This document shows, in pieces, positions 9,405-36,319 of a stretch of DNA of 64,000 nucleotides. Both the position numbers and the translations under genes were made by a program. The stretch's first letter is position 1. The number at the start of each line of letters is the position of its first letter. Below the pieces are notes generated by a model, which did no database searches, was not told where the DNA came from, and worked only from the letters and a program-made list of their open reading frames with translations. The stretch covers positions 1-64,000 of IMG/VR virus record IMGVR_UViG_3300042540_001399. The stretch is one strand, 5' to 3'.

Positions 9405-12323
9405 TTATTTTCTATTATCAAAATAAAATATTACTTCACAATACCACTCTAAAAAATGATCATTAAATAAATCCCATTTAATATCAACACCATCAACAGA
9501 ATAAACTTCATAATTATCAAAGTTAGAAAGAACATTATCCCTAAACCATTTAAATTTACATTTATTAAAATGTTCGTCATCTCTTAAATGAAATTCGGTT
9601 ACAATCTTAGGAATTGTTTTTAAAAATTCTACGTTGCTTGGTTGAAAAACATCGTATTCCCCACCTTCACAATCACATTTTAAAAAATCAATTTTGTTAA
9701 TATTTTCATTTTCTAAAAATTCTTTAAAACTAAATGTAGGAACACTTTCAGTTATTCCATCCCAACTGATTTCAATTTTCTTTTTATCAGTAATTGCTCC
9801 CTGTATAATTTTTACATTATCTTCACCAACATTTTTATGAAGAACTTCAATCTGATATGATAATGGTTCAACTACATAACATTGTTTTGGATTTTTAGGT
9901 AATATTTTATATGTAAATGGACCTAAAGATGCGCCCAAATCTACAACAATATCTCCTTCTTCAACTTCAAAGAATCTTTCATATGTATTATTTTCAAATA
10001 TTTCTTTAGTTGCTTGATTAACATACCAATCACTTTTTTTACCCCAATCGAATGAAGTTTCTTCATTTTTTTCAATCATTAATTCTTTATTTATTATTTT
10101 GTTTATTTCCAAAATGACCATTTCTGAAGTAATTTCTTTCGTACACTCAAACATCCTATCTGTGTTTTTATGTAATGGACACCAATTCCAATCACCAGCA
10201 TCCAATCTTTCCGAATTGAAACATCCGTGACAAACATTTTCATTTATGACTCTGTATGTATTTAAAGTTGTTTCCGCCCATCTTTCACTAAAACCCGATA
10301 TTAAAACAATAGGTAATTCACAAGCCCAAGCCAACCAACTAAGACCTGAACCGAGACCAATAAAAAATTCACATGTTGATAAATCATCAACTACTTCTTG
10401 TAGATTTCCCCCTTTAAATAATTTTACACCTTCAGGATAGTTGTTATTCATGTATCCGTTACCTTCCTTTGAATATATGACACATTCATAACCAAGGGAT
10501 AAAAGGTAGTTCACAACTTCTTGCCATCCATTTGTGTTGTTCCAATATTTTGCCTGAGCAGTTGAATGAAAACCAATACCAACTTTTTTTTCTTTTTTTA
10601 TTTTAGGTAATTTTAATTTTGGTCTTATTTCATTGTATTGTAAACCTAATATATCTGAAGCCGTTTTTTGTAATGGTTGTTTTTTTACATCGACTTTGTG
10701 GATATTTGAATTGATAGTCCCATCTTCATTGTAAAACCAACCTAATCTATATTGTGCGTATATGTTTTGAACAATAACACCCGGTTCGACAAATTCAATT
10801 TCTGTATATTGTTCTTTGAACAAATAGTTCATGAAGGTAGAAACGATTAGTTTACATTTGTGTTTGATTCTAAATTCTTCACAATATGGTAACCATGCTA
10901 AGGTATCCCCTAAAGATTTTGAACCGAATGATATGTAGACTCTTTTATTTTCCAAGTTAAGTAAATTACTATAAATTAGTTGTCCATTTTCTTTTACTTC
11001 GGTTTTCCAAGGTACATAATATTCCGTATTGAGTCTTACCCAATGGTTGATTGGTAATTCGTTTGAATAAATTAAATTATTTTCATCATATATTTTTATA
11101 TCAAGTTTGTTTTCAGTACTACCCAATATTTCCAAAAAAGGATTAACAACAAAATGTTGATTAAACGTGTAATCATTTTTGTGTTTTTGGTTTTGTACTT
11201 TGTCATTTTCTAAAACTCTTTTATAAAATGAATATAATTGTTCCCCAAAATCTTGTTGGGTTTCTATTTCATATGAAGATTCTTTTTCAATTAAACTTAA
11301 TAATTGTTCTGATATTTTTTTATAATCATCATTTTCAATACTTGTGATGTATCTGTCGAACATCCCCATGTACTGAGGTAGGTTTCTGGTCAATATTTTC
11401 ATTCCGTAGTTGATTGCTTCTCTTACAACCAAAGGATTACATTCCCATGTTGAATTGAACATCAAAACATCACATGACTCCATGAATTTATCAACGTCAT
11501 TTCTTTCACCCCATACCGTAACATTTGAAGGTAAGTTTTCCATTATTGGTTTCCAATAAGATTCAAAATTGGGGGCTTGGTTTCCTATGAAGTGAAAATG
11601 TAAATCGGGATTAGTATGTTCCAATAATTTTGCAACTTCGATACCTTCTTTTTGATTTTTTCCTTCGGTCCAAAGACCAACATTAAGAATGTGTGTTTTC
11701 ATTGGGTCCAACCCAAGATTTTCTCTTTCTGTTATTTTTTTCAAAAGAGGTATTTTATGATGTTCATAATAGATTTGTAATTCTTCTAAAATAGGTTTGA
11801 CTTTGTTTTCATATGGGTACAAATGAAGTTCTTTAAGTGATCTTTCAGATTCAAAAGTGGTAAAATGAAAAGGACTAACGAATGAATATGCGTCAGGATG
11901 AAATTTTTTATTATTTGGGTTAAACCAAACATTGTGACACGTTTCAACAATATTCCAAGATCGTTGATTATCATAAAGTTCGTTCAAAATGTCCAATGTA
12001 ATTTTATTAAAACTTTCAAAGGCTTCGGGTATTTCTTCTGAATGAATGATATCTATTTTTAAATCCTTAATTATTTTTAAAAGTTCTTTTTTTCTACTTG
12101 ATTCTGTTGTTGATCCCAAAGTAAAAAAATGACCTACATCTAATAAATCAATGATTTTGTTTCTTTGTACGATATATGTGTCACTAAATTGAGAATATTC
12201 TACTAAAAAAATATCAAGTTTATCTTTGTATTTCAGAAGTGATTCAATTCTTTTTAGGACAAACTGTGGCATACCACCAGTTGATAAATGTGGCGTTAGA
12301 TATAGTATTTTAATTTTTTGCAT
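9405..12323 (-). CDS. Three-domain enzyme: GT4-type glycosyltransferase + TibC/Aah-like protein O-heptosyltransferase + FkbM-family methyltransferase
   Basis: N-term HLSTGG and E-CNPLVVR-E (GT4 EX7E); middle SKSLGDTLAWLPY, FFIGLGSGLSWLAW and CHGC...WCP...FECT iron-finger as in TibC/Aah; C-term VVDLGASLG, VEP, IDFLKCDCEGGE (FkbM). Confidence 0.8.
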   Translation of the reverse strand: MQKIKILYLTPHLSTGGMPQFVLKRIESLLKYKDKLDIFLVEYSQFSDTYIVQRNKIIDLLDVGHFFTLGSTTESSRKKELLKIIKDLKIDIIHSEEIPEAFESFNKITLDILNELYDNQRSWNIVETCHNVWFNPNNKKFHPDAYSFVSPFHFTTFESERSLKELHLYPYENKVKPILEELQIYYEHHKIPLLKKITERENLGLDPMKTHILNVGLWTEGKNQKEGIEVAKLLEHTNPDLHFHFIGNQAPNFESYWKPIMENLPSNVTVWGERNDVDKFMESCDVLMFNSTWECNPLVVREAINYGMKILTRNLPQYMGMFDRYITSIENDDYKKISEQLLSLIEKESSYEIETQQDFGEQLYSFYKRVLENDKVQNQKHKNDYTFNQHFVVNPFLEILGSTENKLDIKIYDENNLIYSNELPINHWVRLNTEYYVPWKTEVKENGQLIYSNLLNLENKRVYISFGSKSLGDTLAWLPYCEEFRIKHKCKLIVSTFMNYLFKEQYTEIEFVEPGVIVQNIYAQYRLGWFYNEDGTINSNIHKVDVKKQPLQKTASDILGLQYNEIRPKLKLPKIKKEKKVGIGFHSTAQAKYWNNTNGWQEVVNYLLSLGYECVIYSKEGNGYMNNNYPEGVKLFKGGNLQEVVDDLSTCEFFIGLGSGLSWLAWACELPIVLISGFSERWAETTLNTYRVINENVCHGCFNSERLDAGDWNWCPLHKNTDRMFECTKEITSEMVILEINKIINKELMIEKNEETSFDWGKKSDWYVNQATKEIFENNTYERFFEVEEGDIVVDLGASLGPFTYKILPKNPKQCYVVEPLSYQIEVLHKNVGEDNVKIIQGAITDKKKIEISWDGITESVPTFSFKEFLENENINKIDFLKCDCEGGEYDVFQPSNVEFLKTIPKIVTEFHLRDDEHFNKCKFKWFRDNVLSNFDNYEVYSVDGVDIKWDLFNDHFLEWYCEVIFYFDNRK

Positions 12324-12379: not shown

Positions 12380-13381
12380 ATGCCAAACTCAGTTAAATAT
12401 TCAACAACAGGGGATACTCGATCAATAAAAAAAGGAAATTTGTATTTTGGTGTTGGTGACGTTCCAAAAGGACCAAGTACCAACACATCTTATTTTAATG
12501 GTATTACACCTGTTACTGGTGGTTATACTGTATATAGGTACGAGCCAACACAAAGTAGTAAACTTGCTTTTTATACTAATCAAACAGGAACTGATCTTGT
12601 AAATTATACAAATAATTTTTTAGGACAAAACTTTTCAACATCAACACAATGTGTGAATTGGTTCAACACACAAACGAATTATGTTTGTGTAAATAAAGAC
12701 TATGACCCAATAATTACTTCAGGACTGACTCTATGTTTAGACGCGTCTTTCACCCCATCATATTCTACTTCTGGAAATTCTTGGTATGATTTATCATATA
12801 ATTCATTTACAACAACTTTAGTTAATGGACCAACATTTGATTCGGGAAATGGCGGATCAATACAGTTTGATGGAACCGACGATCAATGTGTAGTTACGTC
12901 AAATGGGTTTGGTACGTTCAATAATCAGAAATATACAATCGAGGCTTGGGTTAATTTTGCAAGTAATAGTGGGGATATTCCAATTTTTAGTTATGATTAT
13001 TCAAGTTTTAACAACCCATATTATTCTGCTCACCTTAGAAACACGGGTACGGGACAAATATTTTTAGGTTGGAACATGTCGGGATTTTATTACAATATAC
13101 AAACTACATCGACTGTGATTTTTCCCAATACTTGGTATTATGTTGTTGGTATTGTTGAAAGTGGAAGACAACAAATTTATGTTAATAGTAACTTGTGGGC
13201 TAGTGGGACTATATCAGGAACAATAACATTTTATAACACTCCTGTTTATGTTGGGTATTTTCCAAATGCACCTTTAGTCATGAATGGAAAAATTGCCGTG
13301 GTTAGAGTTTATAATAGAGCATTTTCTTCTTCAGAAGTAAGTCAAAATTGGAATGCACAAAAAACAAGATTCGGATATTAA
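12380..13381 (+). CDS. LamG/concanavalin A-like lectin domain virion protein
   Basis: LCLDAS..SY..SGNSWYDLS, FDGTDD, YTIEAWV, WYYVVG, GKIAVVRVYNRA, NWNAQKTRFG pattern of phage LamG proteins. Confidence 0.75.
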   Translation: MPNSVKYSTTGDTRSIKKGNLYFGVGDVPKGPSTNTSYFNGITPVTGGYTVYRYEPTQSSKLAFYTNQTGTDLVNYTNNFLGQNFSTSTQCVNWFNTQTNYVCVNKDYDPIITSGLTLCLDASFTPSYSTSGNSWYDLSYNSFTTTLVNGPTFDSGNGGSIQFDGTDDQCVVTSNGFGTFNNQKYTIEAWVNFASNSGDIPIFSYDYSSFNNPYYSAHLRNTGTGQIFLGWNMSGFYYNIQTTSTVIFPNTWYYVVGIVESGRQQIYVNSNLWASGTISGTITFYNTPVYVGYFPNAPLVMNGKIAVVRVYNRAFSSSEVSQNWNAQKTRFGY

Positions 13382-13422
13382 GGAATTAAATTTTGAAACA
13401 TAATATTTATTTAAAAAAAGTT

Positions 13423-14415
13423 ATGTCAACATCTAGACCTTTTTCATATAATACTGGCTCAACAATAAATGGTACAATACAAGTTGGAAGTTTGGCGGTA
13501 GGATTCCCAACCGTAGGATTTGATTCTACTGGTTTAGAATGGTGGAATGGTCCTGATGAAGATTTAGGTTATGTTATTGCACAACCCGTACCAAATGATA
13601 GTCAACCAACACCTGTGCTTGGACAAACCGCTTCTGTTGGTTTTTTTAGAACCAACGGTTTTGATGATAATGAATTTTTAGACATAACAAATATTTTGTT
13701 AGGAACAAATTATATAGATCCATTTTTAGCATCCTCTGCACTTACAGTAAATGGATTTTGGAATTCTTATCCTAATCCAGTTTTATATTTAGACGCTGGT
13801 GACCCTGCTAGTTATTCAGGAAGTGGTTCCGTTTGGATTGATACAATAGGAGGTAAAACTTTCAACTTAGTTAATGGACCATCTTACGGTCCTGGTTTTG
13901 GTGGAATTCTTAACTTCAACGCGTCAAGTGGTCAATACGCCCAATGTAACACGAGTTTACCAAATTTGAGTAATTGGACGGTTTCTGTTTGGAATTATTA
14001 TGATGGTACAAACGTCGGAGGAGCACCTTGTATTGTTACTGAAATTTATCCGGGTACTACAAGCAACATAAATTATTCAATTGGTGTGAATAATAGTGGA
14101 TTTAACGCCGGGTTTTTCAATGGGGCTTGGAGAGAAAGTGGAACCTATTCATTAAGTCCAAATAATTGGTATTTTATTGTTGGCACATATGATGGTAACA
14201 CATTGAAACTATATATTAATAATACTTTAGTTGGTACAGGAAATTACACTGGTACTCCTATATCATCTCAAGGAGGAATAAGGTTGATGAGAAGATGGGA
14301 TCTTCCCGATTATTGGGGCGGACTGTTAGGTACTGTTGGTATATATGACTTTGCACTCAATTCAGGACAAATATCTGCAATATGGAATACAACTAAATCA
14401 AGGTTTGGTTTGTAA
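13423..14415 (+). CDS. LamG/concanavalin A-like lectin domain virion protein
   Basis: LYLDAGDPASYSGSGSVW, WYFIVGTYDG..LKLYIN, IYDFALNS..WNTTKSRFGL. ATG 13423 after the TATTTAT motif is preferred to the track start at 13393. Confidence 0.75.
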   Translation: MSTSRPFSYNTGSTINGTIQVGSLAVGFPTVGFDSTGLEWWNGPDEDLGYVIAQPVPNDSQPTPVLGQTASVGFFRTNGFDDNEFLDITNILLGTNYIDPFLASSALTVNGFWNSYPNPVLYLDAGDPASYSGSGSVWIDTIGGKTFNLVNGPSYGPGFGGILNFNASSGQYAQCNTSLPNLSNWTVSVWNYYDGTNVGGAPCIVTEIYPGTTSNINYSIGVNNSGFNAGFFNGAWRESGTYSLSPNNWYFIVGTYDGNTLKLYINNTLVGTGNYTGTPISSQGGIRLMRRWDLPDYWGGLLGTVGIYDFALNSGQISAIWNTTKSRFGL

Positions 14416-14468: not shown

Positions 14469-15401
14469 ATGAAAGAAATTTGTATTGATGTTACAGGTTG
14501 TCGTGCTTTGGGCGACACTTTATGTGCAACACCTGTGGTTAAAAAAATAAGTAATACTTATAATAAAAAAGTTTCGGTAGTTTCTCACCACCCAAAATTA
14601 TTTACTAACTTATCATACGTTGAAAACAGTTTTGAATACAACCCAAAATTGTTTGATGATTTGAAAAAAGATTACGATATCTTTCCAACTTTTGATGTGT
14701 CATACAAAGACAATGGAATTTGTAACAAGCACAACTCTATGGATATAAGACAACTACACGCAATAAACTTAGGATTTATGTTGACTAAAGAAGAATCTTC
14801 TTTGGATTATGTACCAGATGCTTGTATCTTACCCATTTTACCAAAAAAATACGTTTTAATCCACCCCGTTCAAAATTGGAATTCAAGGACATGGCCGGCC
14901 AAAAATTGGCAAATATTAACAAAACTTTTAAATGAAAAAGGAATTTACGTTGTATCTGTTGGAAAAGATTCTTCTGAATTAGGTGGGTCTAATGTAGATA
15001 AACCCGTTTTCAATTTTGAAATAGAACTTGGATTAAATCTTATGAACAAAACAACTTTGGATGAAACATGGTATCTGTTAAATGGTTGTTCTTGTTTTGT
15101 AACTATGGACTCTGGACTATTACATTTAGCCGGTACAACAGATTGTGAAATACTACAACTTGGTAGCTCAATAGATCCTGAATTCAGAGCACCATATAGA
15201 CATGGTTCACAAGAATATAAGTATCATTATGTTAGAGGGGGTTGTGGTTTACATTGTGCTTCTGATATGAAGTATGGCGTTAGAGAATGGGGATCGATAC
15301 AAGGAATACCATCTTTAGTTAATTGTTTAGAAAGAAAAAAAACTTTTGAGTGTCATCCTTCTGTTTTACAGATTTATCAAAAAATCTTAGAAATAATATA
15401 A
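14469..15401 (+). CDS. GT9 (heptosyltransferase-like) glycosyltransferase
   Basis: ALGDTLCATP, YVLIHP...SRTWP..NW, FVTMDSGLLHLAG; C-terminal four-Cys cluster. Confidence 0.8.
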   Translation: MKEICIDVTGCRALGDTLCATPVVKKISNTYNKKVSVVSHHPKLFTNLSYVENSFEYNPKLFDDLKKDYDIFPTFDVSYKDNGICNKHNSMDIRQLHAINLGFMLTKEESSLDYVPDACILPILPKKYVLIHPVQNWNSRTWPAKNWQILTKLLNEKGIYVVSVGKDSSELGGSNVDKPVFNFEIELGLNLMNKTTLDETWYLLNGCSCFVTMDSGLLHLAGTTDCEILQLGSSIDPEFRAPYRHGSQEYKYHYVRGGCGLHCASDMKYGVREWGSIQGIPSLVNCLERKKTFECHPSVLQIYQKILEII

Positions 15402-15429: not shown

Positions 15430-15900
15430 GTGTCACAACAAATAACAATTACAGGAATAACAGGCACCCCACCATATGATATATATGTTTGTGATATAAC
15501 AAACACAATCTGTGTTTTTGTAACCGGATTAACTAGTTGTCCACCAACGTATAGTTTTTACGTCCCATCACCCTTAAATAATTCATCGTCTATTATTTTA
15601 AAGATAATTGATTCTGATGCTTGTGAAACCTTTCAACTTTTCAATTGTTTTACACCAACACCTACTCCAACACCTACCCCCACACCAAGTCCTTTACCCA
15701 CTTCTTGTAACTGTATTTCAGTAAGGTCAAACACAATGGATGGTGGAACATTTGATTTTATAGATTGTTTTGGAAATCTTAACACATTTGTCCCAGTACC
15801 TTTTGGTAGTACGTTGTATTTTTGTGGTTCGAACCCGTCCAATTTTAACAACGTAAATCTTACTGTTGGTTTACCATGTGTGCTTAATGTTTGTCCATAA
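15430..15900 (+). CDS. Small Cys-rich putative virion protein with a (PT)n linker
   Basis: Two beta-rich Cys-containing domains joined by TPTPTPTPTPTPSP; TATTTAT motif upstream. Confidence 0.55.
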   Translation: MSQQITITGITGTPPYDIYVCDITNTICVFVTGLTSCPPTYSFYVPSPLNNSSSIILKIIDSDACETFQLFNCFTPTPTPTPTPTPSPLPTSCNCISVRSNTMDGGTFDFIDCFGNLNTFVPVPFGSTLYFCGSNPSNFNNVNLTVGLPCVLNVCP

Positions 15901-15948: not shown

Positions 15949-17196
15949 ATGAAAATTTTTATACAAATTGCATCCTACAGAGATCCACAGTTATTACCCA
16001 CAATTAAAAACTGTATTGAAAATTCAAAACACCCCGAAAATTTAATTTTTTCAATTGCAAGACAATATCACATAGAAGATGGGTTTGATGATTTATCTGA
16101 ATTTGAAAACGACAATAGATTCAAAGTGATCAACATACCCTACACAGAATCCAAAGGGGTTTGTTGGGCAAGAAACATGACACAACAACAATACAATAAT
16201 GAAGAATATACCCTTCAAATTGACTCACACATGAGATTTGAAAAAAATTGGGATGAAACATTAATAGGTATGATTAAAGACTTACAGAAAAAAGGATTTA
16301 AAAAACCTTTACTAACAAGTTATGTTTCTTCATTCGATCCTGAAAACGATCCAACAGGAAGGGTAAATGAACCTTGGAGAATGGCTTTCGATAGATTCAC
16401 ACCCGAAGGTTGTGTTTTTTTCTTACCTGAAGTAATTCCTAATTGGAAAGAACTTGATGGTCCTGTACCATCAAGATTTTATTCCGCACATTTTTGTTTT
16501 ACCTTGGGTCAATTTTCTAAAGAAGTTCAGCACGATCCTGAATATTATTTTCATGGAGAAGAAATATCAATCGCCGTAAGAGCATTTACTCATGGATATG
16601 ATTTGTTTCACCCACACCGTGTGGTCATTTGGCATGAATACACAAGAAAGGGTAGAACAAAACAATGGGATGATGATAAAGAATGGTTTTTGAAAAATGA
16701 CTTTTCACACTCTAAAAACAGAAAACTATTAGGTGTTGACGGTGAAGAACTTGGGAATTTGTCAGACTCTTATGGATTTGGAAAACAAAGAACATTAAGA
16801 GATTATGAAAAATATTCAGGAATATTGTTTTCAAAAAGGGCGGTTCAAAAATATACTTTAGACAAAAATTACCCACCAAACCCAAACAATTTTTCTTCTG
16901 AAGAAGAATGGGAAAAAAGTTTCTCAATGATTTTCAAACACTGTATTGATGTATCATTTAATGACGTACCTGAAAATGATTATGAGTTTTGGGTTGTTGC
17001 CTTTCATAATGAAAAAGATGAAACATTATTTAGACATGATGCTGATGTAAAAGAAATAATTCAAATGAAAAAAGATCCTGATGGTTATTGTAAAGTATGG
17101 AGAGAATTTGATACAACTGAAAAACCCAAGTATTGGGTTGTTTGGCCCTATTCTAAATCCAAGGGATGGTGTAACAGATTAACAGGTAATTTATAA
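15949..17196 (+). CDS. GT60-family polypeptide alpha-GlcNAc transferase (Skp1 Gnt1-like)
   Basis: IFIQIASYRD, SKGVCWAR, LQIDSHMRF..NWD, FHGEEISIAVRAFTHGYDLFHP, WHEY motifs. Confidence 0.8.
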   Translation: MKIFIQIASYRDPQLLPTIKNCIENSKHPENLIFSIARQYHIEDGFDDLSEFENDNRFKVINIPYTESKGVCWARNMTQQQYNNEEYTLQIDSHMRFEKNWDETLIGMIKDLQKKGFKKPLLTSYVSSFDPENDPTGRVNEPWRMAFDRFTPEGCVFFLPEVIPNWKELDGPVPSRFYSAHFCFTLGQFSKEVQHDPEYYFHGEEISIAVRAFTHGYDLFHPHRVVIWHEYTRKGRTKQWDDDKEWFLKNDFSHSKNRKLLGVDGEELGNLSDSYGFGKQRTLRDYEKYSGILFSKRAVQKYTLDKNYPPNPNNFSSEEEWEKSFSMIFKHCIDVSFNDVPENDYEFWVVAFHNEKDETLFRHDADVKEIIQMKKDPDGYCKVWREFDTTEKPKYWVVWPYSKSKGWCNRLTGNL

Positions 17197-18200
17197 TGAT
17201 GGAACTTAACATTAGGCACGAATTTAGGGATCTCAGACTTGGTAACAATGAATTTTACGTTACAAGTTTTTTTAAAAAATTTTATGAAAGTTTAAAAACA
17301 AAATATCCTGAAATAAATTTTAGTATAAAAAATGAAACTTCTTTTGGGAAGTATGGTCAGGGGGGAATTTATAGCTGCATGAATTTTTCTATAGTGAACC
17401 CTATCAACAAAAAGTATGTCTTGATTTCTTTTTTTGATAATTGGAAATATCATTTCATGTCTCATTTAGGTTGGGAGGCTAATAAAATGGTTCAATTTTT
17501 TTATCCCGGCGGATTCAATTTTTATGATTATTTTACCTTTAAGGACACTTCAAAAAATAATTCTGACTTACAGTTTCCAAAAAACATGGACGATATTTTT
17601 ACCCCTTTTTATTATGGACCTTACTTTGATTGTTGTTATGAAGAAATTAATAACATATACAAACAAAATTTAAACAAGGAAAAAATCAATAAATTGTATT
17701 TCAGGGGTTGGATGTGGGATTTCAGAAAAGAAATGGTAAGTAAAATAAATCAAGAAGACATATTAATAATTGATAAAAATAAAAATAATCAGACTTTAAA
17801 TTACTTAGAATTTTTAGAAGATAGTTCCAAATATTCTGCGGTATTGAGTTTACCAGGTGGTAATGAAATGTGTAATAGAGATATAGAATGTTTTGGAATT
17901 GGAGTACCTGTAATAAGACCAGCAGTAAACGTAAAATACAAAGATCCTCTGATACCTAACTATCATTATATTAGTTGTTATGATTTTTGTGATTATTCAA
18001 TTGACGGAAATCCAAAATATATTTCCAACGAAGATTTTCAAAAAAATTTAATAAAAAAATGGAACTCAGTAAAAAATAATAAAGAATATTTAGATTTCGT
18101 TTCAAAAAATGCAAGATCTTGGTTTGAAAAAAATTGTAGGGTGGATAAAAATATAACGTGCGTTTTGGAACAATTAAACTTAGAAAAACTTTTTGAATAA
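17196..18200 (+). CDS. Putative GT-B glycosyltransferase (GT90/GT47-like C-terminal half)
   Basis: KLYFRG, LSLPGG...RDIE..GIGVPVIRP, LIPNYHYI, NARSWFEK; translationally coupled to its GT neighbours. Confidence 0.55.
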   Translation: MMELNIRHEFRDLRLGNNEFYVTSFFKKFYESLKTKYPEINFSIKNETSFGKYGQGGIYSCMNFSIVNPINKKYVLISFFDNWKYHFMSHLGWEANKMVQFFYPGGFNFYDYFTFKDTSKNNSDLQFPKNMDDIFTPFYYGPYFDCCYEEINNIYKQNLNKEKINKLYFRGWMWDFRKEMVSKINQEDILIIDKNKNNQTLNYLEFLEDSSKYSAVLSLPGGNEMCNRDIECFGIGVPVIRPAVNVKYKDPLIPNYHYISCYDFCDYSIDGNPKYISNEDFQKNLIKKWNSVKNNKEYLDFVSKNARSWFEKNCRVDKNITCVLEQLNLEKLFE

Positions 18201-19879
18201 TGATAACTTTAGTAACTGGATTGTGGGATATAGGTAGAGGTGACCTTAAAGAAGGGTGGTCAAGAAATTTTGATTTCTATTTAGAAAGATTTAGAGATAT
18301 TTTAAAAATAGATTGTAATCTTATTATTTTTGGTGATGAAGAATTACATAAGTTTGTATTATCAGAAAATAGGGACAAAACAAAAACAAAATTTATCACA
18401 AGAAACTTAGATTGGTTTAGAAACAACGAATATTTTGAAAAAATTCAAAACATAAGAAAAGACCCGAAATGGTTTAATCAAGTTGGGTGGTTAAAAGATT
18501 CGACCCAATCAACTTTAGAAATGTACAATCCTTTGGTCATGTCCAAAATGTTTTTATTACATGACGCGATGTTACTTGATCCATTCAATTCTGAAAAGTT
18601 ATATTGGATTGATGCGGGAATTACAAATACTGTAAATTTAGGTTATTTTACAAATGACGATGTTTTATCAAAAATTGACAAATTATTAAACAACTTTACT
18701 TTCTTAGCATTTCCTTATGAAACAGATACAGAAATACACGGATTTTCAATAAAAGGAATGACGGATTACATAGGAAAAAAACCAGATATGGTATGTAGGG
18801 GAGGATTTTTTGGTGGCCCAAAGCATTTAATTTCTGAAATGAATGTTAATTACTATCAAACATTAATTAGTACTCTTTCTGATGGATACATGGGAACAGA
18901 AGAAAGTATCTTTACTATTTTAACCTATAACTTACCTACCATAATAGATTTTTGTAAAATTGATTCTAATGGTTTAGTTTATAAATTTTTTGAAGACATA
19001 AAAAATAATCAAGTTGTTATAGAAAACACTTCGGTTACGAAGTTTGAAAAAAAACCAATATCATATTCTGGAGGCGTCGGATTATATGTTATAACATTTA
19101 ATTCACCAAAACAATTTGAAGTTTTGATTGAATCTATGTTAGAATACGATCCTTCGTTTTTAAGTAAAACTAAAAAGTTTTTATTGGATAATTCTACAGA
19201 TTTAACTACAAGTAAAGAATACAAAAATTTGTGTAGTTTATATGATTTTGAACATATCAAAAAAAATAATATAGGCATAACTGGTGGCAGACAATTTATC
19301 GCCGAACATTTTAACCAACAGGATGACTTGGATACTTATTATTTTTTTGAAGATGATATGGCTTTTTACAAAAAAGATTCCGGTGTTTGTAAAAATGGTT
19401 TTTCAAGATACATTAAACACATTTTTGATATTACTCAAGAAATAATAAAAAAAGAAAATTTTGATTTTTTAAAACTTAATTTTACCGAATTTTTTGGAAG
19501 TCATGATAAGCAGTGGGCTTGGTACAATGTACCTCAAACATTTAGGGAAAAACATTGGCCAAAAAACAAAAGTCTACCAAAACAAGGTTTGGACCCAAAT
19601 TCACCTAATTTAGAGTTCAAACATATAAAATCACATAGAGGTTTAGCATATGCATCAGGAGAAATTTATTTATCAAATTGGCCAATACTTATGACTAAAA
19701 ATGGTAATTATAATTGTTATCTGAAAACAAAATTTAAAAATCCTTATGAACAAACATTGATGAGCCATTGTTATCAAGAAACAATCAAAGGAAATATTTT
19801 TGGATCTGTTTTACTATTGACACCAACAGAACATAATAGATTTGACTTTTATGATTCTAAATTAAGAAAAGAATGTTGA
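18200..19879 (+). CDS. HtrL/YibB (WlaTC)-like glycosyltransferase fused to a GT2-like domain
   Basis: ITLVTGLWDIGR, YWIDAG, GGFFGG, GTEESIFT (HtrL); second half LYVITFN, LLDNS, NIGITGGRQ, FFEDD (GT-A). Confidence 0.7.
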   Translation: MITLVTGLWDIGRGDLKEGWSRNFDFYLERFRDILKIDCNLIIFGDEELHKFVLSENRDKTKTKFITRNLDWFRNNEYFEKIQNIRKDPKWFNQVGWLKDSTQSTLEMYNPLVMSKMFLLHDAMLLDPFNSEKLYWIDAGITNTVNLGYFTNDDVLSKIDKLLNNFTFLAFPYETDTEIHGFSIKGMTDYIGKKPDMVCRGGFFGGPKHLISEMNVNYYQTLISTLSDGYMGTEESIFTILTYNLPTIIDFCKIDSNGLVYKFFEDIKNNQVVIENTSVTKFEKKPISYSGGVGLYVITFNSPKQFEVLIESMLEYDPSFLSKTKKFLLDNSTDLTTSKEYKNLCSLYDFEHIKKNNIGITGGRQFIAEHFNQQDDLDTYYFFEDDMAFYKKDSGVCKNGFSRYIKHIFDITQEIIKKENFDFLKLNFTEFFGSHDKQWAWYNVPQTFREKHWPKNKSLPKQGLDPNSPNLEFKHIKSHRGLAYASGEIYLSNWPILMTKNGNYNCYLKTKFKNPYEQTLMSHCYQETIKGNIFGSVLLLTPTEHNRFDFYDSKLRKEC

Positions 19880-19906: not shown

Positions 19907-20374
19907 ATGGAATTTTTTATTAAAAAGAATGCCACTCTCCCTTTGTTGAAAATGCAGGTTGTTAAGGATGGTAGGAGTGATTTTAACAAGATGATGGATC
20001 TAATTGAAAGCTCTGCTGTGTTTTTTTCTATGGTTGACATAGAAACAGGTATACCTAAAATTGTTACAAGACCGGCAGGATTTGTGTCCAAAAAATTGTT
20101 AGACCCAAACGCCGACCCTGAATATTATATATATTATCAATTTACAAACAAAGACACAAAAAAAGTCGGAAGATACGAAGGTCAATTTCTTTTTAGAAAT
20201 GATGACGGTGTATTAATTTTACCAATTAGAGAAAAGTTATTTATAAATGTACAAGAAAGTTTTATTGCTGATGACTTACCATATGATTCTTGTTATGTAA
20301 GTGAATTCCCTTGTTGTATTTCACCCAACCCATTTCCACCAAACACAACAACAACCACAACTTTATTTTTTTAA
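19907..20374 (+). CDS. BppU-like (baseplate upper protein N-domain-like) virion protein with Thr-rich tail
   Basis: FFIKKNATLPLLKMQV...YQFT..DT...GRYEGQF...LILP pattern; ends PPNTTTTTTLFF. Confidence 0.5.
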   Translation: MEFFIKKNATLPLLKMQVVKDGRSDFNKMMDLIESSAVFFSMVDIETGIPKIVTRPAGFVSKKLLDPNADPEYYIYYQFTNKDTKKVGRYEGQFLFRNDDGVLILPIREKLFINVQESFIADDLPYDSCYVSEFPCCISPNPFPPNTTTTTTLFF

Positions 20375-31450: not shown

Positions 31451-34400
31451 ATGGCAACTAACAGTAAAATTTTCGTTTCACCTGGTGTCTATACTTCTGA
31501 AGTAGATTTAAGTTTTGTGGCACAAAGCGTTGGTGTTACAACTTTAGGTATTGTCGGAGAAACACTTAAAGGTCCGGCCTTCGAACCTATTTTTATTAAA
31601 AACTATGATGAGTTCCAATCTTACTTTGGTCCTACTTCACCTGAAAAATTTGTAAATACTCAAATTCCTAAATATGAAGCGGCATACATCGCCAAATCAT
31701 ATTTACAACAATCTAATCAATTATTTGTAACTAGAGTTTTAGGTTTATCGGGATATGATGCGGGTCCTTCTTGGTCAATAATTACAAGCGCAAACTTAGA
31801 TCCTTCCACTTTGGCACCTTATTGTTTGAGTTCAGTAACAATAGATTGTCAGGATGTTTGTGTGTCAGCTAAGACATTACCTTTTCAAGTGGCATTTACA
31901 GGTTGTACTAACTCACCAAGTTCTGTTTCTTTCGGAGCCTTTCCTGCAGAAATAGAAGCGTTGTTAACATCACAATACGAACAGTTCAACGGTAATACTT
32001 CGACTTTATTAGAAGATTTACAGTTTTTTACATATCAAAGAATTTTAAATCCTCTTTCTCAAAATACATCTATTGCTTACTTCGGTACTATTGATGGTGA
32101 TGATTATGACATGTTGTCAAGTGGATATACAGCTTCTACAAATGTGTTTAATGTACCATCACCTTCTAGTAACTTAACAAACTTCTTATCACCATTTAAT
32201 GATACTTGGTACTATGCTTTGTTTGAAAACACAGGAAATAGTAATTATTCGGGTTATTCATTTTGGTCTGTTGTTTCAGGGTTAACATCAATTAATCCAA
32301 TAACTACAACTACAATTCCTCCAACAACTACGTCAACGACTACAAATCCTTGTATAACACCAACACCTGTGGTTCCTACTACAACAACTACTACTACTGT
32401 TGTTGATTGTTACTCAGGAACAGTTATAGGTATGATATATTATTATACCGGTAATTCATACACTCTTTATGATGACATGGTTATTGCAACACTAAGATCA
32501 AGAGGTATTGCGGATTACAGCGATGACGTGAACCCAAGATATGAAATAACTGGTTTGACTGATGTTACAATGGATTGTTCAGGTCAATATTCGGGCGTAT
32601 TAAAAAATCCATTTGCTAAATTTGCAATAAATGCGACTAACTACTTAGGTAACAACTTTACTTTTGTTACGTCGTTCGCAAATTCGGATTCAGAATATCT
32701 TACAAAAGTATTCGGAACAAGTAACTTTGGTAAACCAAGAAATGTGGTACCACTTTTTGTGGAAGAAAGATTCCAATCACTTTTAAGATGGGCGTATAAC
32801 AAAGGTTACATACGAGGTTTAAAATGTGGTTTAATATCATTACCTGAAGCACAAAGCGAAGATCCAACATCAATTGCTTGGTACTTAGAAAAGTATCAAT
32901 CACCTGAAAGTCCATGGGTTGTTTCTGAAGTTAGAGGTTCCAAAGTTTATAACTTATTTAAATTTTACACAATTTCTGACGGGAACAGTGCCAACACAGA
33001 AGTTAAAATATCTATATCTGATATATCTTTCGCAAATGAAACATTTACAGTTTTAATTCGTGATTACTACGATACAGATTCAAATCCTGTTGTGTTAGAA
33101 AAATTCACAAACTGTACTATGAATCCAAGCGAAAATAGTTTTATAGCCAAAAAAATTGGTACTTTGGACGGTGAGTTTGAATTGAAATCAAGATATGTAA
33201 TGGTTGAAATGAATGAAGACGCACCAATAGATTCATTACCTTGTGGATTTGAAGGATATAATTTCAGAGAATATGCAGGAGCAAAATCACCATTCCCTAT
33301 AATTAAAACTAAATATGATTACCCAGGTGAGTTAGTTTTCAATCCACCTTTTGGTACACCATCAGGTACAGACGATGCTGGATTATCATCAGGTGATAAT
33401 ATAAGAAAAACTTTCTTAGGGTTTTCTACAAGTGCCGATTACGGTTATGACCCAAGTTTCTTCGAATATAAAGGTAAAAGAAATCCTTCAAACATATGTT
33501 TTGCAACTGAATCATCTCCTTGGTTATATAGAACTAAAGGGTTCCACATGGACAAAAACGCAAGTGGTATTACAATTGCTAACGTTTTTGCAACAAGTGG
33601 CACTCCTCGTTTCTACGTAGGTGATGCGTCTTTCAGTTCTGAACCTACTGTTGAAACAAACCCTTACTACCGTTTATTTGCTCGTAAATTTACTTTACTT
33701 GTACAAGGTGGATTCGATGGTTGGGATATCTACAGAGAAAGAAGAACAAACGCAGATAAATACCAATTAGGTAGAACTGGTTACTTAAATGGGGCTTGTG
33801 CAACAACAAGATACCCTTCAGCAGTTGGTTGGGGAGCGTTTAAACAAATTACTGTTGGTGACGGTACAAGAGAATACGCAAACACTGACTATTACGCTTA
33901 CTTACTTGGTATCAGAACTTTTGCTAATCCTGAAGCGGTTAATATAAATGTATTTGTTACACCAGGAATTGACTATGTTAACAACAGTGACTTAGTAGAA
34001 GATACAATAGATATGATAGAAAACGAAAGAGCGGATTCTTTGTATATAACAACTACACCTGACTACAATTTGTTATTACCTACCACAACTGGTGTAGATG
34101 GTTTGATTTATCCACAAGAAGCGGTTGATAATCTTGATGGTACAGGAATCGATTCTAACTATACCGCCACTTACTATCCGTGGGTGTTAACAAGAGATAG
34201 TGTAAATAACACACAAATTTATCTACCACCAACGGCTGAAGTAACCAGAAATTTAGCATTAACAGACAACATTGCGTTTCCTTGGTTTGCTGCGGCGGGT
34301 TATACTCGTGGTATTGTAAACGCTATCAAAGCTCGTAAGAAGTTGACTCAAGAAGACAGAGATGTTCTTTATCTTGGTAGAATCAACCCTATTGCTACAT

Positions 34401-34774
34401 TCTCAGATGTGGGTACAGTAATATGGGGTAATAAAACCCTACAAGTAAGACAGTCAGCACTTGATAGAATAAACGTTCGAAGATTATTGTTACAAGCACG
34501 TAAGTTAATTTCGGCAGTTTCAGTAAGATTATTGTTTGATCAGAACGATGAAAAAGTAAGACAAGATTTCCTAAATGCGGTAAATCCAATATTAGATGGT
34601 ATCAGAAGGGATAGGGGTCTTTATGACTTTAGAGTTACCGTATCAAATGACACGGCTGATCTAGATAGAAATCAGATGACTGGTAAGATATATATCAAAC
34701 CAACAAGATCACTAGAATTTATAGATATTACATTCTACATTACACCAACAGGTGCTTCTTTCGAAGATGTATGA
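31451..34774 (+). CDS. Contractile tail sheath protein
   Basis: SPGVYTSEVDLS, GETLKGPAFEP, PWFAAAGYTRG, RINPI, WGNKTLQ, LDRINVRRLL, IKPTRSLEFI. Confidence 0.95.
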   Translation: MATNSKIFVSPGVYTSEVDLSFVAQSVGVTTLGIVGETLKGPAFEPIFIKNYDEFQSYFGPTSPEKFVNTQIPKYEAAYIAKSYLQQSNQLFVTRVLGLSGYDAGPSWSIITSANLDPSTLAPYCLSSVTIDCQDVCVSAKTLPFQVAFTGCTNSPSSVSFGAFPAEIEALLTSQYEQFNGNTSTLLEDLQFFTYQRILNPLSQNTSIAYFGTIDGDDYDMLSSGYTASTNVFNVPSPSSNLTNFLSPFNDTWYYALFENTGNSNYSGYSFWSVVSGLTSINPITTTTIPPTTTSTTTNPCITPTPVVPTTTTTTTVVDCYSGTVIGMIYYYTGNSYTLYDDMVIATLRSRGIADYSDDVNPRYEITGLTDVTMDCSGQYSGVLKNPFAKFAINATNYLGNNFTFVTSFANSDSEYLTKVFGTSNFGKPRNVVPLFVEERFQSLLRWAYNKGYIRGLKCGLISLPEAQSEDPTSIAWYLEKYQSPESPWVVSEVRGSKVYNLFKFYTISDGNSANTEVKISISDISFANETFTVLIRDYYDTDSNPVVLEKFTNCTMNPSENSFIAKKIGTLDGEFELKSRYVMVEMNEDAPIDSLPCGFEGYNFREYAGAKSPFPIIKTKYDYPGELVFNPPFGTPSGTDDAGLSSGDNIRKTFLGFSTSADYGYDPSFFEYKGKRNPSNICFATESSPWLYRTKGFHMDKNASGITIANVFATSGTPRFYVGDASFSSEPTVETNPYYRLFARKFTLLVQGGFDGWDIYRERRTNADKYQLGRTGYLNGACATTRYPSAVGWGAFKQITVGDGTREYANTDYYAYLLGIRTFANPEAVNINVFVTPGIDYVNNSDLVEDTIDMIENERADSLYITTTPDYNLLLPTTTGVDGLIYPQEAVDNLDGTGIDSNYTATYYPWVLTRDSVNNTQIYLPPTAEVTRNLALTDNIAFPWFAAAGYTRGIVNAIKARKKLTQEDRDVLYLGRINPIATFSDVGTVIWGNKTLQVRQSALDRINVRRLLLQARKLISAVSVRLLFDQNDEKVRQDFLNAVNPILDGIRRDRGLYDFRVTVSNDTADLDRNQMTGKIYIKPTRSLEFIDITFYITPTGASFEDV

Positions 34775-35830: not shown

Positions 35831-36319
35831 ATGGCTGATCTTTTAATGAAAATGCCGATACCGTATGAACCAAAAAAACAGAATAGGTTTATTCTACGGT
35901 TTCCAACTGATTTAGGAATTAATGAATGGTTTGTACAAACCGCATCAAGACCTAAAATAACTATTACATCAAACACAATCAAATTTTTGAACACTGAAAC
36001 ATACGTAGCGGGTTCTTTTAACTGGGGTGATATAAGTGTAAAAATGTTAGACCCTATTGGACCATCAAATGCTCAGGCGGTTATGGAATGGGTACGATTA
36101 GTTGCCGAATCAGTTACAGGTCGTATGGGTTACGCCGCGGGTTATAAAAGAAACGTTGACTTGGAAATGTTAGACCCAACAGGTGTTGTTATCGAAAGAT
36201 GGATATTAGTTAATGCATTTCCAATAAGTGCTGACTTTGGTTCAGTCGGATACGGAACTGATAGTCCTACTGAAATTACAATGAACCTAAAAATGGACAG
36301 AGCAATTTTAGTTTATTAA
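35831..36319 (+). CDS. Tail tube protein (gp19-like)
   Basis: YEPKKQNRFIL, WGDISV..LDPI, GYKRNV.LEMLDP.G..IERW.L..AFP. Confidence 0.9.
   Translation: MADLLMKMPIPYEPKKQNRFILRFPTDLGINEWFVQTASRPKITITSNTIKFLNTETYVAGSFNWGDISVKMLDPIGPSNAQAVMEWVRLVAESVTGRMGYAAGYKRNVDLEMLDPTGVVIERWILVNAFPISADFGSVGYGTDSPTEITMNLKMDRAILVY

What the first reader, a model, noticed from the sequence alone, without database searches (positions are those of the whole stretch)
32297..32410. Mucin-like Thr/Pro insert in the tail sheath, echoed in two other genes
Seen: the 1107-aa sheath contains PITTTTIPPTTTSTTTNPCITPTPVVPTTTTTTTVVDC; similar tracts occur at about 15652-15693 (TPTPTP...) and 20336-20364 (PPNTTTTTT). Known: trypanosome GT60 enzymes glycosylate Pro-flanked poly-Thr peptides. 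Inference: these are portable glycosylation tags for the GT60 gene at 15949, which would coat the tail in a glycan brush.
Basis: partly seen in the sequence, partly recalled or inferred. Interest (0 to 1): 0.7.

Follow-up and report, generated by a model that had tools for sequence, protein, structure and literature searches.

The report
Thr/Pro-rich loop in phage tail sheath
A jumbo phage of freshwater Bacteroidota carries a disordered, threonine-rich loop in the non-core part of its tail sheath, similar tracts in at least ten other large proteins, and a conserved GT60-type sugar transferase, so a sugar-coated tail is plausible but not shown.

Summary
The gene at 15949-17196 is a strong PF11397 (GT60-type) match.

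- The 290.9-kb genome has about 15 Thr-run or (Thr-Pro)n tracts in 11 large modular proteins.
- It also has a large glycosylation island around a giant collagen-like Gly-Thr-X gene. The island includes an Aah/TibC-type protein O-heptosyltransferase.

In the sheath the tract is a low-confidence coil between two long strands. It lies outside the conserved core, at a junction where relatives carry different or extra domains. Its composition is conserved; its sequence is not.

The co-occurrence evidence is mixed:
- GT60 is a core gene, kept even where the sheath tract has been replaced by a folded domain.
- Poly-Thr tracts are common in viral contigs without GT60.
- All seven GT60-positive phage genomes tested are rich in (TP)n. 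Four GT60-negative large phages have none.
- The cultured phage XacN1, which carries the same GT60/HtrL-like module, has Schiff-positive virion proteins.

Glycosylation of the sheath loop is therefore plausible (about 0.45) but unproven. The tracts are not copy-and-paste cassettes.

The parts
31451..34774 (+). Tail sheath gene, 1107 aa. The conserved core is about aa 28-100 plus about 800-1107. About 700 residues of extra domains lie between.
   Evidence: PF17482, PF04984 and phrog_23. AF2 model: pLDDT 87.3, pTM 0.80. Z 35 to a T4-like sheath and Z 31-34 to minimal sheaths over about 310-325 residues.
32297..32410 (+). Thr/Pro-rich tract, sheath aa 283-320. Two T-rich halves flank a conserved (N/D)PC motif, and the tract ends at a conserved Cys in DCYSG.
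   Evidence: Translation. Coil with pLDDT 51-68 between strands 265-281 and 320-336. Across 113 homologues the tract is T 48%, P 21%, S 5%. 88% of Thr positions stay T, S or P despite saturated synonymous change.
15949..17196 (+). GT60-type (PF11397) glycosyltransferase, 415 aa, soluble. It has a D92-S93-H94 motif and a C-terminal beta-sandwich at aa 327-415.
   Evidence: PF11397 at E 5e-70 and phrog_24687 at E 1.4e-164. 73-99% identity in thousands of metagenome relatives. The motif is invariant in 23 of 23 sequences. GT-A fold at Z 11.6; FN3-like C-terminal domain at Z about 7.5.
15430..15900 (+). 156-aa Cys-rich protein with a (TP)6 linker (15652-15693) between two small domains.
   Evidence: Relatives keep the TP linker and carry C-terminal parts of up to about 1,500 aa.
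19907..20374 (+). 155-aa protein with a conserved 138-aa core ending in FPCC, then a PPNT6 tail (20336-20362).
   Evidence: In relatives the tail is absent, is a T run, or is a TP linker carrying extra domains.
18200..19879 (+). HtrL/YibB-like protein, 559 aa, co-conserved with GT60.
   Evidence: PF09612 at E 3.4e-18 and TIGR02192. Found in 78 of 80 GT60 loci. 39-40% identical over its full length in XacN1 and RAS14, next to their GT60.
17196..18200 (+). 334-aa ORF of unknown function between GT60 and HtrL-like.
   Evidence: No Pfam, PHROG or NCBIfam hit. Found in only 13 of 80 related loci.
14469..15401 (+). GT9-like (heptosyltransferase fold) protein, 310 aa.
   Evidence: PF01075 at E 1.6e-16. 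NCBIfam hits fall below the cut-offs.
12380..14415 (+). Two adjacent ConA-like or Laminin_G_3 domain proteins (12380-13381 and 13393-14415).
   Evidence: PF13385 at E 5.6e-22 and 1.5e-18.
9405..12323 (-). 972-aa fusion protein: GT4 (aa 197-362), Aah/TibC-type protein O-heptosyltransferase (aa 400-743) and FkbM methyltransferase (aa 793-912).
   Evidence: PF00534 and PF05050. TIGR04414 at 281 bits against an equivalog cut-off of 200; TIGR01444.
1..9372 (+). 3' part of a giant collagen-like ORF: more than 2,500 aa of G-T-(N/S/D) triplets (27% Thr), followed by a Cys-rich C-terminal region. It is another possible substrate of the island.
   Evidence: Translation and composition. 649 pattern matches, found in this genome only. 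The same repeat lies at the other contig end.
35831..36319 (+). Tail tube gene. It gives the context that identifies the sheath.
   Evidence: phrog_4542 at E 3.3e-22.

Best explanation
The tract is a disordered, hydrophilic loop or linker in the non-core part of the tail sheath of a roughly 290-kb freshwater phage. That non-core part is presumably the outer side. The phage probably infects Bacteroidota. The tract sits at the junction between a variable N-proximal extra domain (about aa 105-281) and the more widely conserved domains (aa 320 onward).

It is one of about 15 Thr-run or (Thr-Pro)n tracts in 11 large modular proteins of this genome.

The most likely mechanism is as follows. The tracts act as extended spacers, and the phage's own soluble enzymes O-glycosylate them in the host cytoplasm before assembly. 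The GT60-type enzyme would add the first sugar, probably GlcNAc from UDP-GlcNAc, to Thr. The co-conserved HtrL-like protein and other island transferases would extend it. The result would be mucin-like patches on the tail and on other virion or surface proteins.

Shown: the tract, its conserved composition, the predicted disorder and position in the chain, the GT60-family membership, and the size of the glycosylation island.

Inferred: surface exposure, donor and acceptor specificity, and that any modification takes place.
For: Position and conservation of the tract:
- It is a coil with pLDDT 51-68 in an otherwise confident model.
- Only about 310-325 residues (the N and C ends) align with minimal sheaths, so the tract lies outside the core. 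In solved sheaths such extra domains project outward (textbook knowledge, not tested here).
- Distant sheath homologues start to align only at about aa 313-330.
- A sub-clade replaces the first T run with one or two folded domains of about 85 aa.
- Composition is conserved but sequence is not. The tract is T 48%, P 21%, S 5%; the rest of the protein is T 8.9%, S 8.2%. 88% of Thr positions stay T, S or P.

The enzyme and the island:
- PF11397 at 237 bits. No signal peptide and an invariant D-S-H motif. It is a core gene.
- The characterised family members add alpha-GlcNAc to Thr in Pro-flanked T-rich peptides (PMC3769586; PMC8724618).
- The island holds an Aah/TibC-type protein O-glycosyltransferase above its equivalog cut-off and many further GT domains.
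- ThyA is canonical, so nothing points to hydroxymethyl-pyrimidine DNA as the sugar acceptor.

Co-occurrence:
- (TP)3 is present 14-43 times in all 7 GT60-positive genomes tested, with 0-1 hits in controls. It is absent from 4 GT60-negative large phages.
- 8 of 26 TP5-bearing IMG/VR contigs carry PF11397, with 30-75% identity to this GT60, so they come from several lineages.
- XacN1 shares the GT60 and HtrL-like module and has at least two Schiff-positive virion proteins (PMC5852040).
Against: - There is no direct evidence that the tract is modified.
- GT60 is retained in genomes whose sheath lacks the tract (G001, G003, G004, G009, G010, G013, G079, G081).
- GT60 is also retained in genomes with almost no Thr6 runs: G003, G004, XacN1 and RAS14.
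- Thr8 and (TP)5 tracts occur in many viral contigs without PF11397. Only 1 of 19 Thr8 contigs has it, and 4 of 5 complete TP5 genomes lack it.
- TP linkers are a generic device of secreted multidomain proteins.
- Two fragments with tract-bearing sheaths (G019, G084) show no GT60 where synteny predicts it. Both are incomplete.
- No phage or bacterial member of PF11397 has a known acceptor, and the family also includes a hydroxyproline-specific enzyme.
- The GT60 model was poor (pLDDT 59.5).
- I could not read model coordinates, so outward orientation is topological inference only.
Confidence: 0.45

Rival explanations
1. The tracts are unmodified spacers. Thr/Pro-rich segments are stiff, extended, hydrophilic and protease-resistant linkers that join shuffled domains. 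The sheath tract would simply be the linker, or hinge, left at a domain-swap junction. The GT60 and the other transferases would act on something else: the collagen-like fibre, other phage or host proteins, or host envelope glycans.
For: - Tracts sit at domain junctions in modular proteins whose C-terminal parts vary from none to more than 1,000 aa.
- The sheath junction coincides with the limit of homology to distant relatives.
- The non-synonymous rate in the tract is twice that of the rest of the gene.
- GT60 presence does not depend on the sheath tract or on Thr runs.
- T and TP tracts are common in viral contigs without GT60.
- SprB, PKD and CHU_C domains in tract-bearing proteins point to a Bacteroidota-like surface-protein architecture, in which TP linkers are ordinary.
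Against: - Pure spacers usually tolerate Ser, Gly and Ala freely. Here Thr outnumbers Ser about 9 to 1 in the tract but 1 to 1 elsewhere. No other residue forms runs to a comparable extent.
- (TP)n abundance follows GT60 across divergent phage lineages: 7 of 7 against 0 of 4, plus 8 of 26 TP5 contigs.
- A soluble enzyme from a family known for Thr-rich acceptors would meet these disordered tracts in the same cytoplasm.
- A phage with the same gene module has glycosylated virion proteins.
Confidence: 0.4
2. The tracts are glycosylated, but not by the GT60. Another island enzyme would start the glycan: the Aah/TibC-type O-heptosyltransferase fusion, the GT9-like protein or one of the GT2 enzymes. 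GT60 would then serve a different acceptor.
For: - TIGR04414 scores 281 bits against a cut-off of 200 for a known cytoplasmic protein O-glycosyltransferase family.
- At least a dozen GT domains lie around the collagen-like gene.
- GT60 is retained without Thr runs.
Against: - Aah/TibC enzymes are known for Ser in beta-helical autotransporter repeats, not for disordered Thr runs (textbook knowledge, not tested here).
- The GT9-like gene and ORF334 are present in only 12-13 of 80 related loci, whereas GT60 and HtrL-like are in 78-80.
Confidence: 0.1
3. The tract is a chance low-complexity run, an assembly artefact or a slippage artefact with no function.
For: TRF reports a weak 3-nt periodicity over the T7 run.
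Against: - The tract is in frame and present in hundreds of independent metagenome contigs.
- Codons are mixed.
- Expected Thr runs are 0.08 against 9 seen.
- Composition is conserved at 60-92% sheath identity.
Confidence: 0.02

Closest known systems
Protist mucin-type O-glycosylation started by GT60 pp-alpha-GlcNAc transferases (T. cruzi TcOGNT, Dictyostelium pp-alpha-GlcNAcT2); the cytosolic relative Gnt1 acts on Skp1 hydroxyproline.
   Same: The phage enzyme matches the same Pfam family (PF11397). It has a GT-A fold and a D-x-H motif. The candidate acceptors, Pro-flanked Thr runs and TP repeats, resemble the KPP-T8-KPP acceptor.
   Different: The phage enzyme is soluble and would act in a bacterial cytoplasm on virion proteins. 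It carries an extra C-terminal beta-sandwich. The genome has no PF13640-type prolyl hydroxylase, so the Skp1-type route is unlikely. Its activity and acceptor are untested.
Mycobacteriophage virion glycosylation (Freeman et al. 2023, cited in PMC12619734): phage glycosyltransferases decorate the C-termini of capsid and tail-tube subunits.
   Same: A phage-encoded cytoplasmic glycosyltransferase would modify its own structural proteins at flexible segments (as summarised by the citing paper).
   Different: The enzyme families and the host phylum differ. Here the candidate site is an internal loop of the sheath, plus linkers in many other proteins, rather than C-terminal extensions. I could not read the original paper.
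Xanthomonas jumbo phage XacN1 and its relatives Xoo-sp13, Stenotrophomonas CM1 and RAS14.
   Same: They have GT60 homologues (43-45% identity). XacN1 and RAS14 also have HtrL-like homologues (39-40%). XacN1 has a GT9-like gene and a giant 3,313-aa neighbour with PT linkers. XacN1 virions contain at least two Schiff-positive proteins.
   Different: Their host phylum differs. The XacN1 pattern hits listed do not fall in its sheath gene, and Thr6 runs are absent from its genome. The stained proteins were not identified.
Pro/Thr-rich interdomain linkers of secreted bacterial and fungal enzymes and surface proteins ('PT boxes').
   Same: The composition, the position at domain junctions, the variable length and the low sequence conservation all match.
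   Different: Here one such segment sits inside a contractile sheath subunit, and homopolymeric Thr runs occur beside TP repeats. Whether such linkers are glycosylated depends on the organism (textbook knowledge).
'Moraphages', large freshwater phages of Bacteroidota (PMC12619734).
   Same: They have 200-307-kb genomes, come from freshwater metagenomes, have predicted Bacteroidota hosts, sometimes carry glutamine synthetase, and have four core glycosyltransferase groups. This genome is 290.9 kb, has SprB and CHU_C domains, and has a GS-like gene.
   Different: Membership was not tested by phylogeny. In the passages I searched, the paper does not mention Thr/Pro tracts, GT60 or the sheath insert.

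Membership tests
Contractile tail sheath (T4 gp18 / PF04984 + PF17482) | Sequence match to the sheath C-terminal domain | tested here: met
   PF17482 at 36 bits against a cut-off of 26.9. phrog_23 at E 1.4e-58. PF04984 at 28.1 bits is just under its cut-off of 31.4.
Contractile tail sheath (T4 gp18 / PF04984 + PF17482) | Sheath fold, with the conserved core formed by the N- and C-terminal segments | tested here: met
   AF2 model pLDDT 87.3. Foldseek E 3e-20 to T4. VIA Z 35 to the KP1 sheath and Z 31-34 to pyocin, AFP and CIS sheaths, spanning model residues about 27-1086.
Contractile tail sheath (T4 gp18 / PF04984 + PF17482) | Adjacent tail tube gene | tested here: met
   35831-36319, phrog_4542 at E 3.3e-22.
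GT60 / PF11397 polypeptide alpha-GlcNAc transferase | Profile match above the curated threshold | tested here: met
   237 bits against a cut-off of 21, E 5e-70. The mapping of PF11397 to CAZy GT60 rests on my own knowledge and on PMC8724618.
GT60 / PF11397 polypeptide alpha-GlcNAc transferase | GT-A fold with a D-x-H or D-x-D metal site | tested here: inconclusive
   D92-S93-H94 is invariant in 23 of 23 sequences. The N-terminal half matches GT-A enzymes at Z 8-11.6, including GalNAc-T1 and T3. However, the model's middle third is unreliable (pLDDT 59.5), and no PDB sequence match was found.
GT60 / PF11397 polypeptide alpha-GlcNAc transferase | Transfers alpha-GlcNAc from UDP-GlcNAc to Thr (or Hyp) of a polypeptide | not testable with these tools
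   This needs an enzyme assay. A complex prediction with the sheath peptide gave no verdict.
GT60 / PF11397 polypeptide alpha-GlcNAc transferase | For the Skp1-type branch: a partner prolyl 4-hydroxylase | tested here: not met
   No PF13640 match in the 290.9-kb genome. Other 2OG-oxygenase families were not searched.
Mucin-like (PTS) domain | High Thr/Ser/Pro content in a disordered segment | tested here: met
   28 of 38 residues are T, S or P. Coil with pLDDT 51-68.
Mucin-like (PTS) domain | Dense O-glycosylation | not testable with these tools
   There is no proteomic or glycan data for this uncultured phage.
Mucin-like (PTS) domain | Tandem repeat organisation | tested here: not met
   TRF finds only a 3-nt array over the T7 run. 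The tract has two T-rich halves around a conserved NPC motif.
Phage virion self-glycosylation (mycobacteriophage type) | Phage-encoded glycosyltransferases together with glycosylated structural proteins | tested here: inconclusive
   Many GT genes are present. Glycoproteins are shown only in the distant relative XacN1.
Aah/TibC autotransporter O-heptosyltransferases (for the neighbouring gene 9405-12323) | Equivalog-level profile match | tested here: met
   TIGR04414 at 281.4 bits against a cut-off of 200, over aa 400-743.

The most novel reading that the evidence does not exclude
Several lineages of jumbo phages carry a complete, self-encoded mucin-type O-glycosylation system. It would be homologous to the protist GT60 pathway, working in the bacterial cytoplasm. 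It would coat the tail sheath, fibres and other virion proteins with alpha-GlcNAc-initiated glycans on Thr-run and (TP)n tracts. This would be the first mucin-type system in a bacterial virus and the first glycosylated contractile sheath.
Probability: 0.3. Interest if true: 0.8.

Novelty: new variant of a known kind. Interest (0 to 1): 0.55.

Why it matters
Glycosylation of phage structural proteins is rarely documented. [quoted passage not shown]

If the Thr/Pro tracts are acceptors for a phage GT60, several things follow:
- A very abundant freshwater phage clade, with thousands of metagenome relatives, would carry mucin-like glycan patches on a moving machine part.
- Such patches could affect virion stability, protease resistance, adhesion to particles or host surfaces, and recognition by grazers or immune systems.
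- An enzyme family known only from protists would gain a prokaryotic-virus branch with a predicted substrate.
- The claim would become directly testable, either in the cultured relative XacN1 or by co-expression in E. coli.

If the tracts are bare linkers, the finding is an ordinary feature of modular surface proteins.

Tried and rejected
- Complex prediction of GT60 with sheath aa 268-334: no verdict (score 0.00). It counts neither for nor against.
- AF2 model of GT60 from a shallow alignment: poor (pLDDT 59.5). It was used only to assign the GT-A fold and a weak FN3-like C-terminal domain.
- Sequence searches of GT60 against the PDB, as a single sequence and as a profile: no true hit. The T7 RNA polymerase hits at E about 0.2 are noise.
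- Skp1-type hydroxyproline route: no PF13640 hydroxylase in the genome.
- DNA glycosylation as the purpose of the island: the thymidylate-synthase homologue is a canonical ThyA above its equivalog cut-offs, so there is no sign of hydroxymethyl pyrimidines. This is not excluded for other chemistries.
- 'Portable cassette' idea: an all-against-all blastn of tract regions with 90-nt flanks gives only 15-51-nt low-complexity matches inside the tracts.
- Collagen-like giant protein as the universal GT60 substrate: the G-T-x repeat is absent from six other GT60-positive genomes, although such repeats may break assemblies.
- Pfam on the sheath extra domains and on the sub-clade's inserted domain: only sub-threshold hits, DUF5018 and a cadherin-like domain.
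- PHROG annotation of the neighbours of tract-bearing genes at 64-91 kb: uninformative.
- Two papers were not held: Freeman 2023 and Heise 2009.
- Literature searches for GT60 in phages and for glycosylated tail sheaths found nothing relevant.
- I could not obtain model coordinates, so no radial-position calculation was possible.
Full report
**1. What is there**

The window is the first 64 kb of a single 290,887-bp contig with 31% G+C. Several genes mark it as a large myophage:
- a 1107-aa tail sheath (31451-34774), a tail tube (35831-36319), and baseplate hub and wedge genes;
- a family-B DNA polymerase, helicases and a ribonucleotide reductase.

SprB, PKD and CHU_C (type IX secretion) domains in several proteins point to a Bacteroidota host. 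I did not test membership.

**2. The observation**

Window 32297-32410 translates in frame to the quoted 38-residue peptide (P0001): 20 Thr, 7 Pro, 1 Ser.
- (TP)6 in ORF 15430-15900;
- PPNT6 at the C-terminus of ORF 19907-20374.

The gene at 15949-17196 matches PF11397 at 237 bits, against a cut-off of 21.

The tracts are far from chance.
- Thr is the only residue far above expectation for runs of 5 or more: 9 seen, 0.08 expected. Asp (4), Pro (2) and Leu (1) are the only others with any.
- Pro-Thr is the only dipeptide repeat.
- Ser, Asn and Lys, which are at least as frequent, form no runs.
- Codons are mixed, so the tracts are kept at the protein level and are not DNA microsatellites.

The whole genome has about 15, in 11 proteins. 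Besides the sheath, they include:
- Hoc-like, SprB-repeat proteins;
- a papain-like peptidase;
- a protein with a type IX secretion sorting domain;
- several large proteins of unknown function.

No replication enzyme examined carries one.

**3. Anatomy of the sheath tract**

The AF2 model is confident (pLDDT 87.3, pTM 0.80). Residues 282-319 are the exception: a coil with pLDDT 51-68 between two 17-residue strands, 265-281 and 320-336.

The model matches T4-like sheaths at Z 35. It matches the roughly 350-residue minimal sheaths of pyocins, AFP and other contractile injection systems at Z 31-34, over about 310-325 residues drawn from both ends of the chain. About 700 residues between roughly aa 100 and 800 are therefore additions to the core. 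In solved sheaths such additions project away from the tube.

Three comparisons place the tract at a domain junction that tolerates large changes.
- Among 150 representatives at 65% identity or less, homology typically begins at aa 313-330, just after the tract. Only one representative has a comparable tract at this site.
- Within the close clade (60-92% identity), the tract is always framed by a conserved (N/D)PC and a C-Y-S-G motif. Inside that frame it switches freely between Thr runs and TP repeats.
- A sub-clade (1185-1274 aa) replaces the first Thr run with one or two beta-rich domains of about 85 aa, and replaces the second run with non-Thr sequence.

Across 113 homologues the tract is 48% Thr, 21% Pro and 5% Ser. 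The rest of the protein is 8.9% Thr and 8.2% Ser. The non-synonymous rate in the tract is twice that of the rest. Even so, 88% of Thr positions remain Thr, Ser or Pro, while synonymous changes are saturated. Selection therefore acts on composition, not on sequence.

**4. The enzyme and its neighbourhood**

The GT60-type protein has these features:
- It starts directly in the first Rossmann strand, with no signal or membrane segment.
- It keeps an invariant D92-S93-H94 motif.
- It is 73-99% identical in thousands of metagenome relatives, so it is a core gene of the clade.
- My model of it was poor. Its confident parts give a GT-A fold (Z up to 11.6) and a C-terminal FN3-like sandwich.

The gene lies in a large glycosylation island:
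- a 972-aa fusion of a GT4 domain, an Aah/TibC-type protein O-heptosyltransferase (TIGR04414, 281 bits against a cut-off of 200) and an FkbM methyltransferase (9405-12323, minus strand);
- two ConA-like proteins, a GT9-like protein and the TP-linker protein ORF156;
- GT60, an unknown ORF, an HtrL/YibB-like protein and ORF155.

Across the contig ends the island continues with a GT2 cluster at 271.7-282.4 kb and two TP-rich proteins. In its centre is a giant collagen-like gene: more than 2,500 aa of Gly-Thr-(Asn/Ser/Asp) triplets, 27% Thr.

Two alternative uses of the enzymes find no support:
- The genome's thymidylate synthase is canonical, so nothing points to sugar-modified hydroxymethyl bases.
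- There is no PF13640 prolyl hydroxylase, so the Skp1-type hydroxyproline route of GT60 is unlikely.

**5. Does the tract go with GT60?**

Within the clade GT60 is essentially invariant, while the sheath tract is not. Of twelve contigs that hold both genes, six have the tract and six have the folded-domain variant. The variant group includes a complete 304-kb genome and a 91%-complete 272-kb genome. More distant GT60-positive contigs also have tract-less sheaths. GT60 therefore does not depend on the sheath tract.

The hypothesis really predicts the reverse: tract implies enzyme. That prediction holds in every adequately covered contig. Two fragments (G019, G084) are the exceptions. They lack GT60 where synteny predicts it, but they are only 31-34% complete.

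A sister lineage with a 978-988-aa sheath and no tract shows no GT60 in six fragments, two of which cover at least 17 kb upstream of the sheath.

Across phages the result depends on the motif.
- Thr6 runs are enriched in this genome (10 hits) and in G002 (11). They are more weakly enriched in G006 (9, against 3 in the control). They are near background in G003, G004, XacN1 and RAS14, all GT60-positive.
- Only 1 of 19 viral contigs with a coding Thr8 run has PF11397.
- (TP)3 occurs 14-43 times in all seven GT60-positive genomes, against 0-1 in the control pattern. It is absent from four GT60-negative large phages of 166-484 kb.
- Of 26 IMG/VR contigs of at least 43 kb picked only for a (TP)5 match, 8 carry PF11397. 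Their enzymes are 30-75% identical to this GT60, so they come from several lineages.
- All of the roughly ten contigs whose estimated genome is under 100 kb lack it, including four of the five complete genomes in the set.

The samples are small and confounded by host, genome size and the abundance of this clade. They suggest an association of GT60 with TP-rich proteins in certain jumbo phages. They do not show a strict link, and poly-Thr alone shows no link.

**6. An experimental anchor**

GT60 and the HtrL-like protein form a conserved pair. It is present in 78-80 of 80 related loci. It is also present, at 39-45% identity over the full length, in the Xanthomonas and Stenotrophomonas jumbo phages XacN1 and RAS14.

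In XacN1 the pair lies near a GT9-like gene and a 3,313-aa protein that follows the baseplate wedge genes and has PT linkers. The XacN1 authors detected at least two Schiff-positive virion proteins and proposed that the two phage transferases make them (PMC5852040). The bands were not identified.

**7. Interpretation**

Firm:
- The tract is real and conserved in composition. It is predicted to be disordered, and it sits at a variable domain junction outside the sheath core.
- The genome has a specific excess of Thr-run and TP tracts.
- It encodes a soluble, conserved GT60-family enzyme and at least one enzyme of a bona fide protein O-glycosyltransferase family.

Inferred:
- The loop faces outward.
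- The GT60 uses UDP-GlcNAc and Thr-rich acceptors, as its protist relatives do (PMC3769586, PMC8724618).
- The sheath loop is one of its substrates.

My estimates are about 0.45 that the tract is glycosylated with GT60 as the initiating enzyme, about 0.40 that it is a bare spacer, and about 0.10 that it is glycosylated by another enzyme.

The 'portable tag' wording is not supported at the DNA level. The tracts behave like linkers that arise, or are retained, wherever domains are joined.

**8. Comparison and novelty**

The nearest known systems are:
- the protist GT60 mucin-type pathway, which shares the enzyme family and the acceptor style;
- mycobacteriophage virion glycosylation, which shares the logic but uses different enzymes and sites;
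- XacN1, which shares the gene module and has glycoproteins that were seen but not mapped;
- ordinary PT linkers.

I found no paper that links GT60 to phages or that reports a glycosylated sheath. The moraphage paper lists four core glycosyltransferase groups without substrates.

If confirmed, this would be a new variant of phage self-glycosylation. As it stands it is a well-founded, testable hypothesis and not a result.

Noticed in passing
window 1-9372 (+), and the last ~1.2 kb or more of the contig (genome ~289.7-290.9 kb): A giant collagen-like ORF: more than 2,500 aa of Gly-Thr-(Asn/Ser/Asp) triplets, 29% Gly and 27% Thr, with many N-G-T motifs. The repeat lies at both contig ends and the frames do not join, so the assembly breaks inside the gene. 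The opposite strand is also open because of the repeat. The repeat was not found in six other GT60-positive genomes.
   Followed up: partly
window ~8340-9372 (+), C-terminal part of the giant ORF: A Cys-rich region with five repeats of a C-x2-C-x4-N-P-C module. The conserved NPC in the sheath tract and the Cys-rich small proteins ORF155 and ORF156 suggest that many virion proteins are disulphide-bonded.
   Followed up: no
window 9405-12323 (-): A 972-aa fusion of a GT4 domain, an Aah/TibC-type protein O-heptosyltransferase (TIGR04414, above its equivalog cut-off) and an FkbM methyltransferase. It is convergent with the collagen-like gene. A protein O-heptosyltransferase in a phage looks unusual.
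   Followed up: partly
window 24766-26898 (-): A 710-aa protein with complete Fe/Mn superoxide dismutase domains (aa 167-355) inside a larger protein of otherwise unknown function. It is conserved in relatives (57-73% identity).
   Followed up: no
genome 200373-202892 (L003:1374-3893, +): A phage protein with SprB repeats, a PKD domain, a TP linker and a C-terminal CHU_C type IX secretion sorting domain. It may be exported by the host's T9SS.
   Followed up: no
genome 271701-282447 (-), 218992-219342 and 220284-220652 (+): Further GT2 and GT1-like genes. With the window's island, this phage has a dozen or more glycosyltransferase domains.
   Followed up: partly
genome 147452-149659 (L423, L178): A glutamine-synthetase-like ORF directly upstream of a canonical thymidylate synthase.
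   Followed up: partly
genome 286256-289132 (L002:6257-9133, +): A 958-aa protein with a (PT)6 linker, a Thr5 run and a C-terminal papain-like peptidase domain (phrog_16701, E 2.3e-53). It lies just upstream of a 262-aa protein that is one third TP repeats.
   Followed up: no
relatives L170-L175 (sheath genes of G001, G003, G004, G009, G010, G013); proteins P0023, P0077: A sheath sub-clade with one or two extra beta-rich domains of about 85 aa inserted exactly where this phage has its first Thr run. The site acts as a display position on the sheath.
   Followed up: partly
L527 (G019:C1:81500-91109) and L529 (G084:C1:1-5600): In two close relatives, the region beyond the DNA polymerase gene, where this phage has ORF155, HtrL-like and GT60, holds 5-10 kb with no homologue in this genome. 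This looks like a hot spot of gene replacement.
   Followed up: partly
window 12380-14415 (+): Two tandem ConA-like (Laminin_G_3) proteins inside the glycosylation island. They could be lectin-like or fibre proteins. They are present in only 14-23 of 80 related loci.
   Followed up: no
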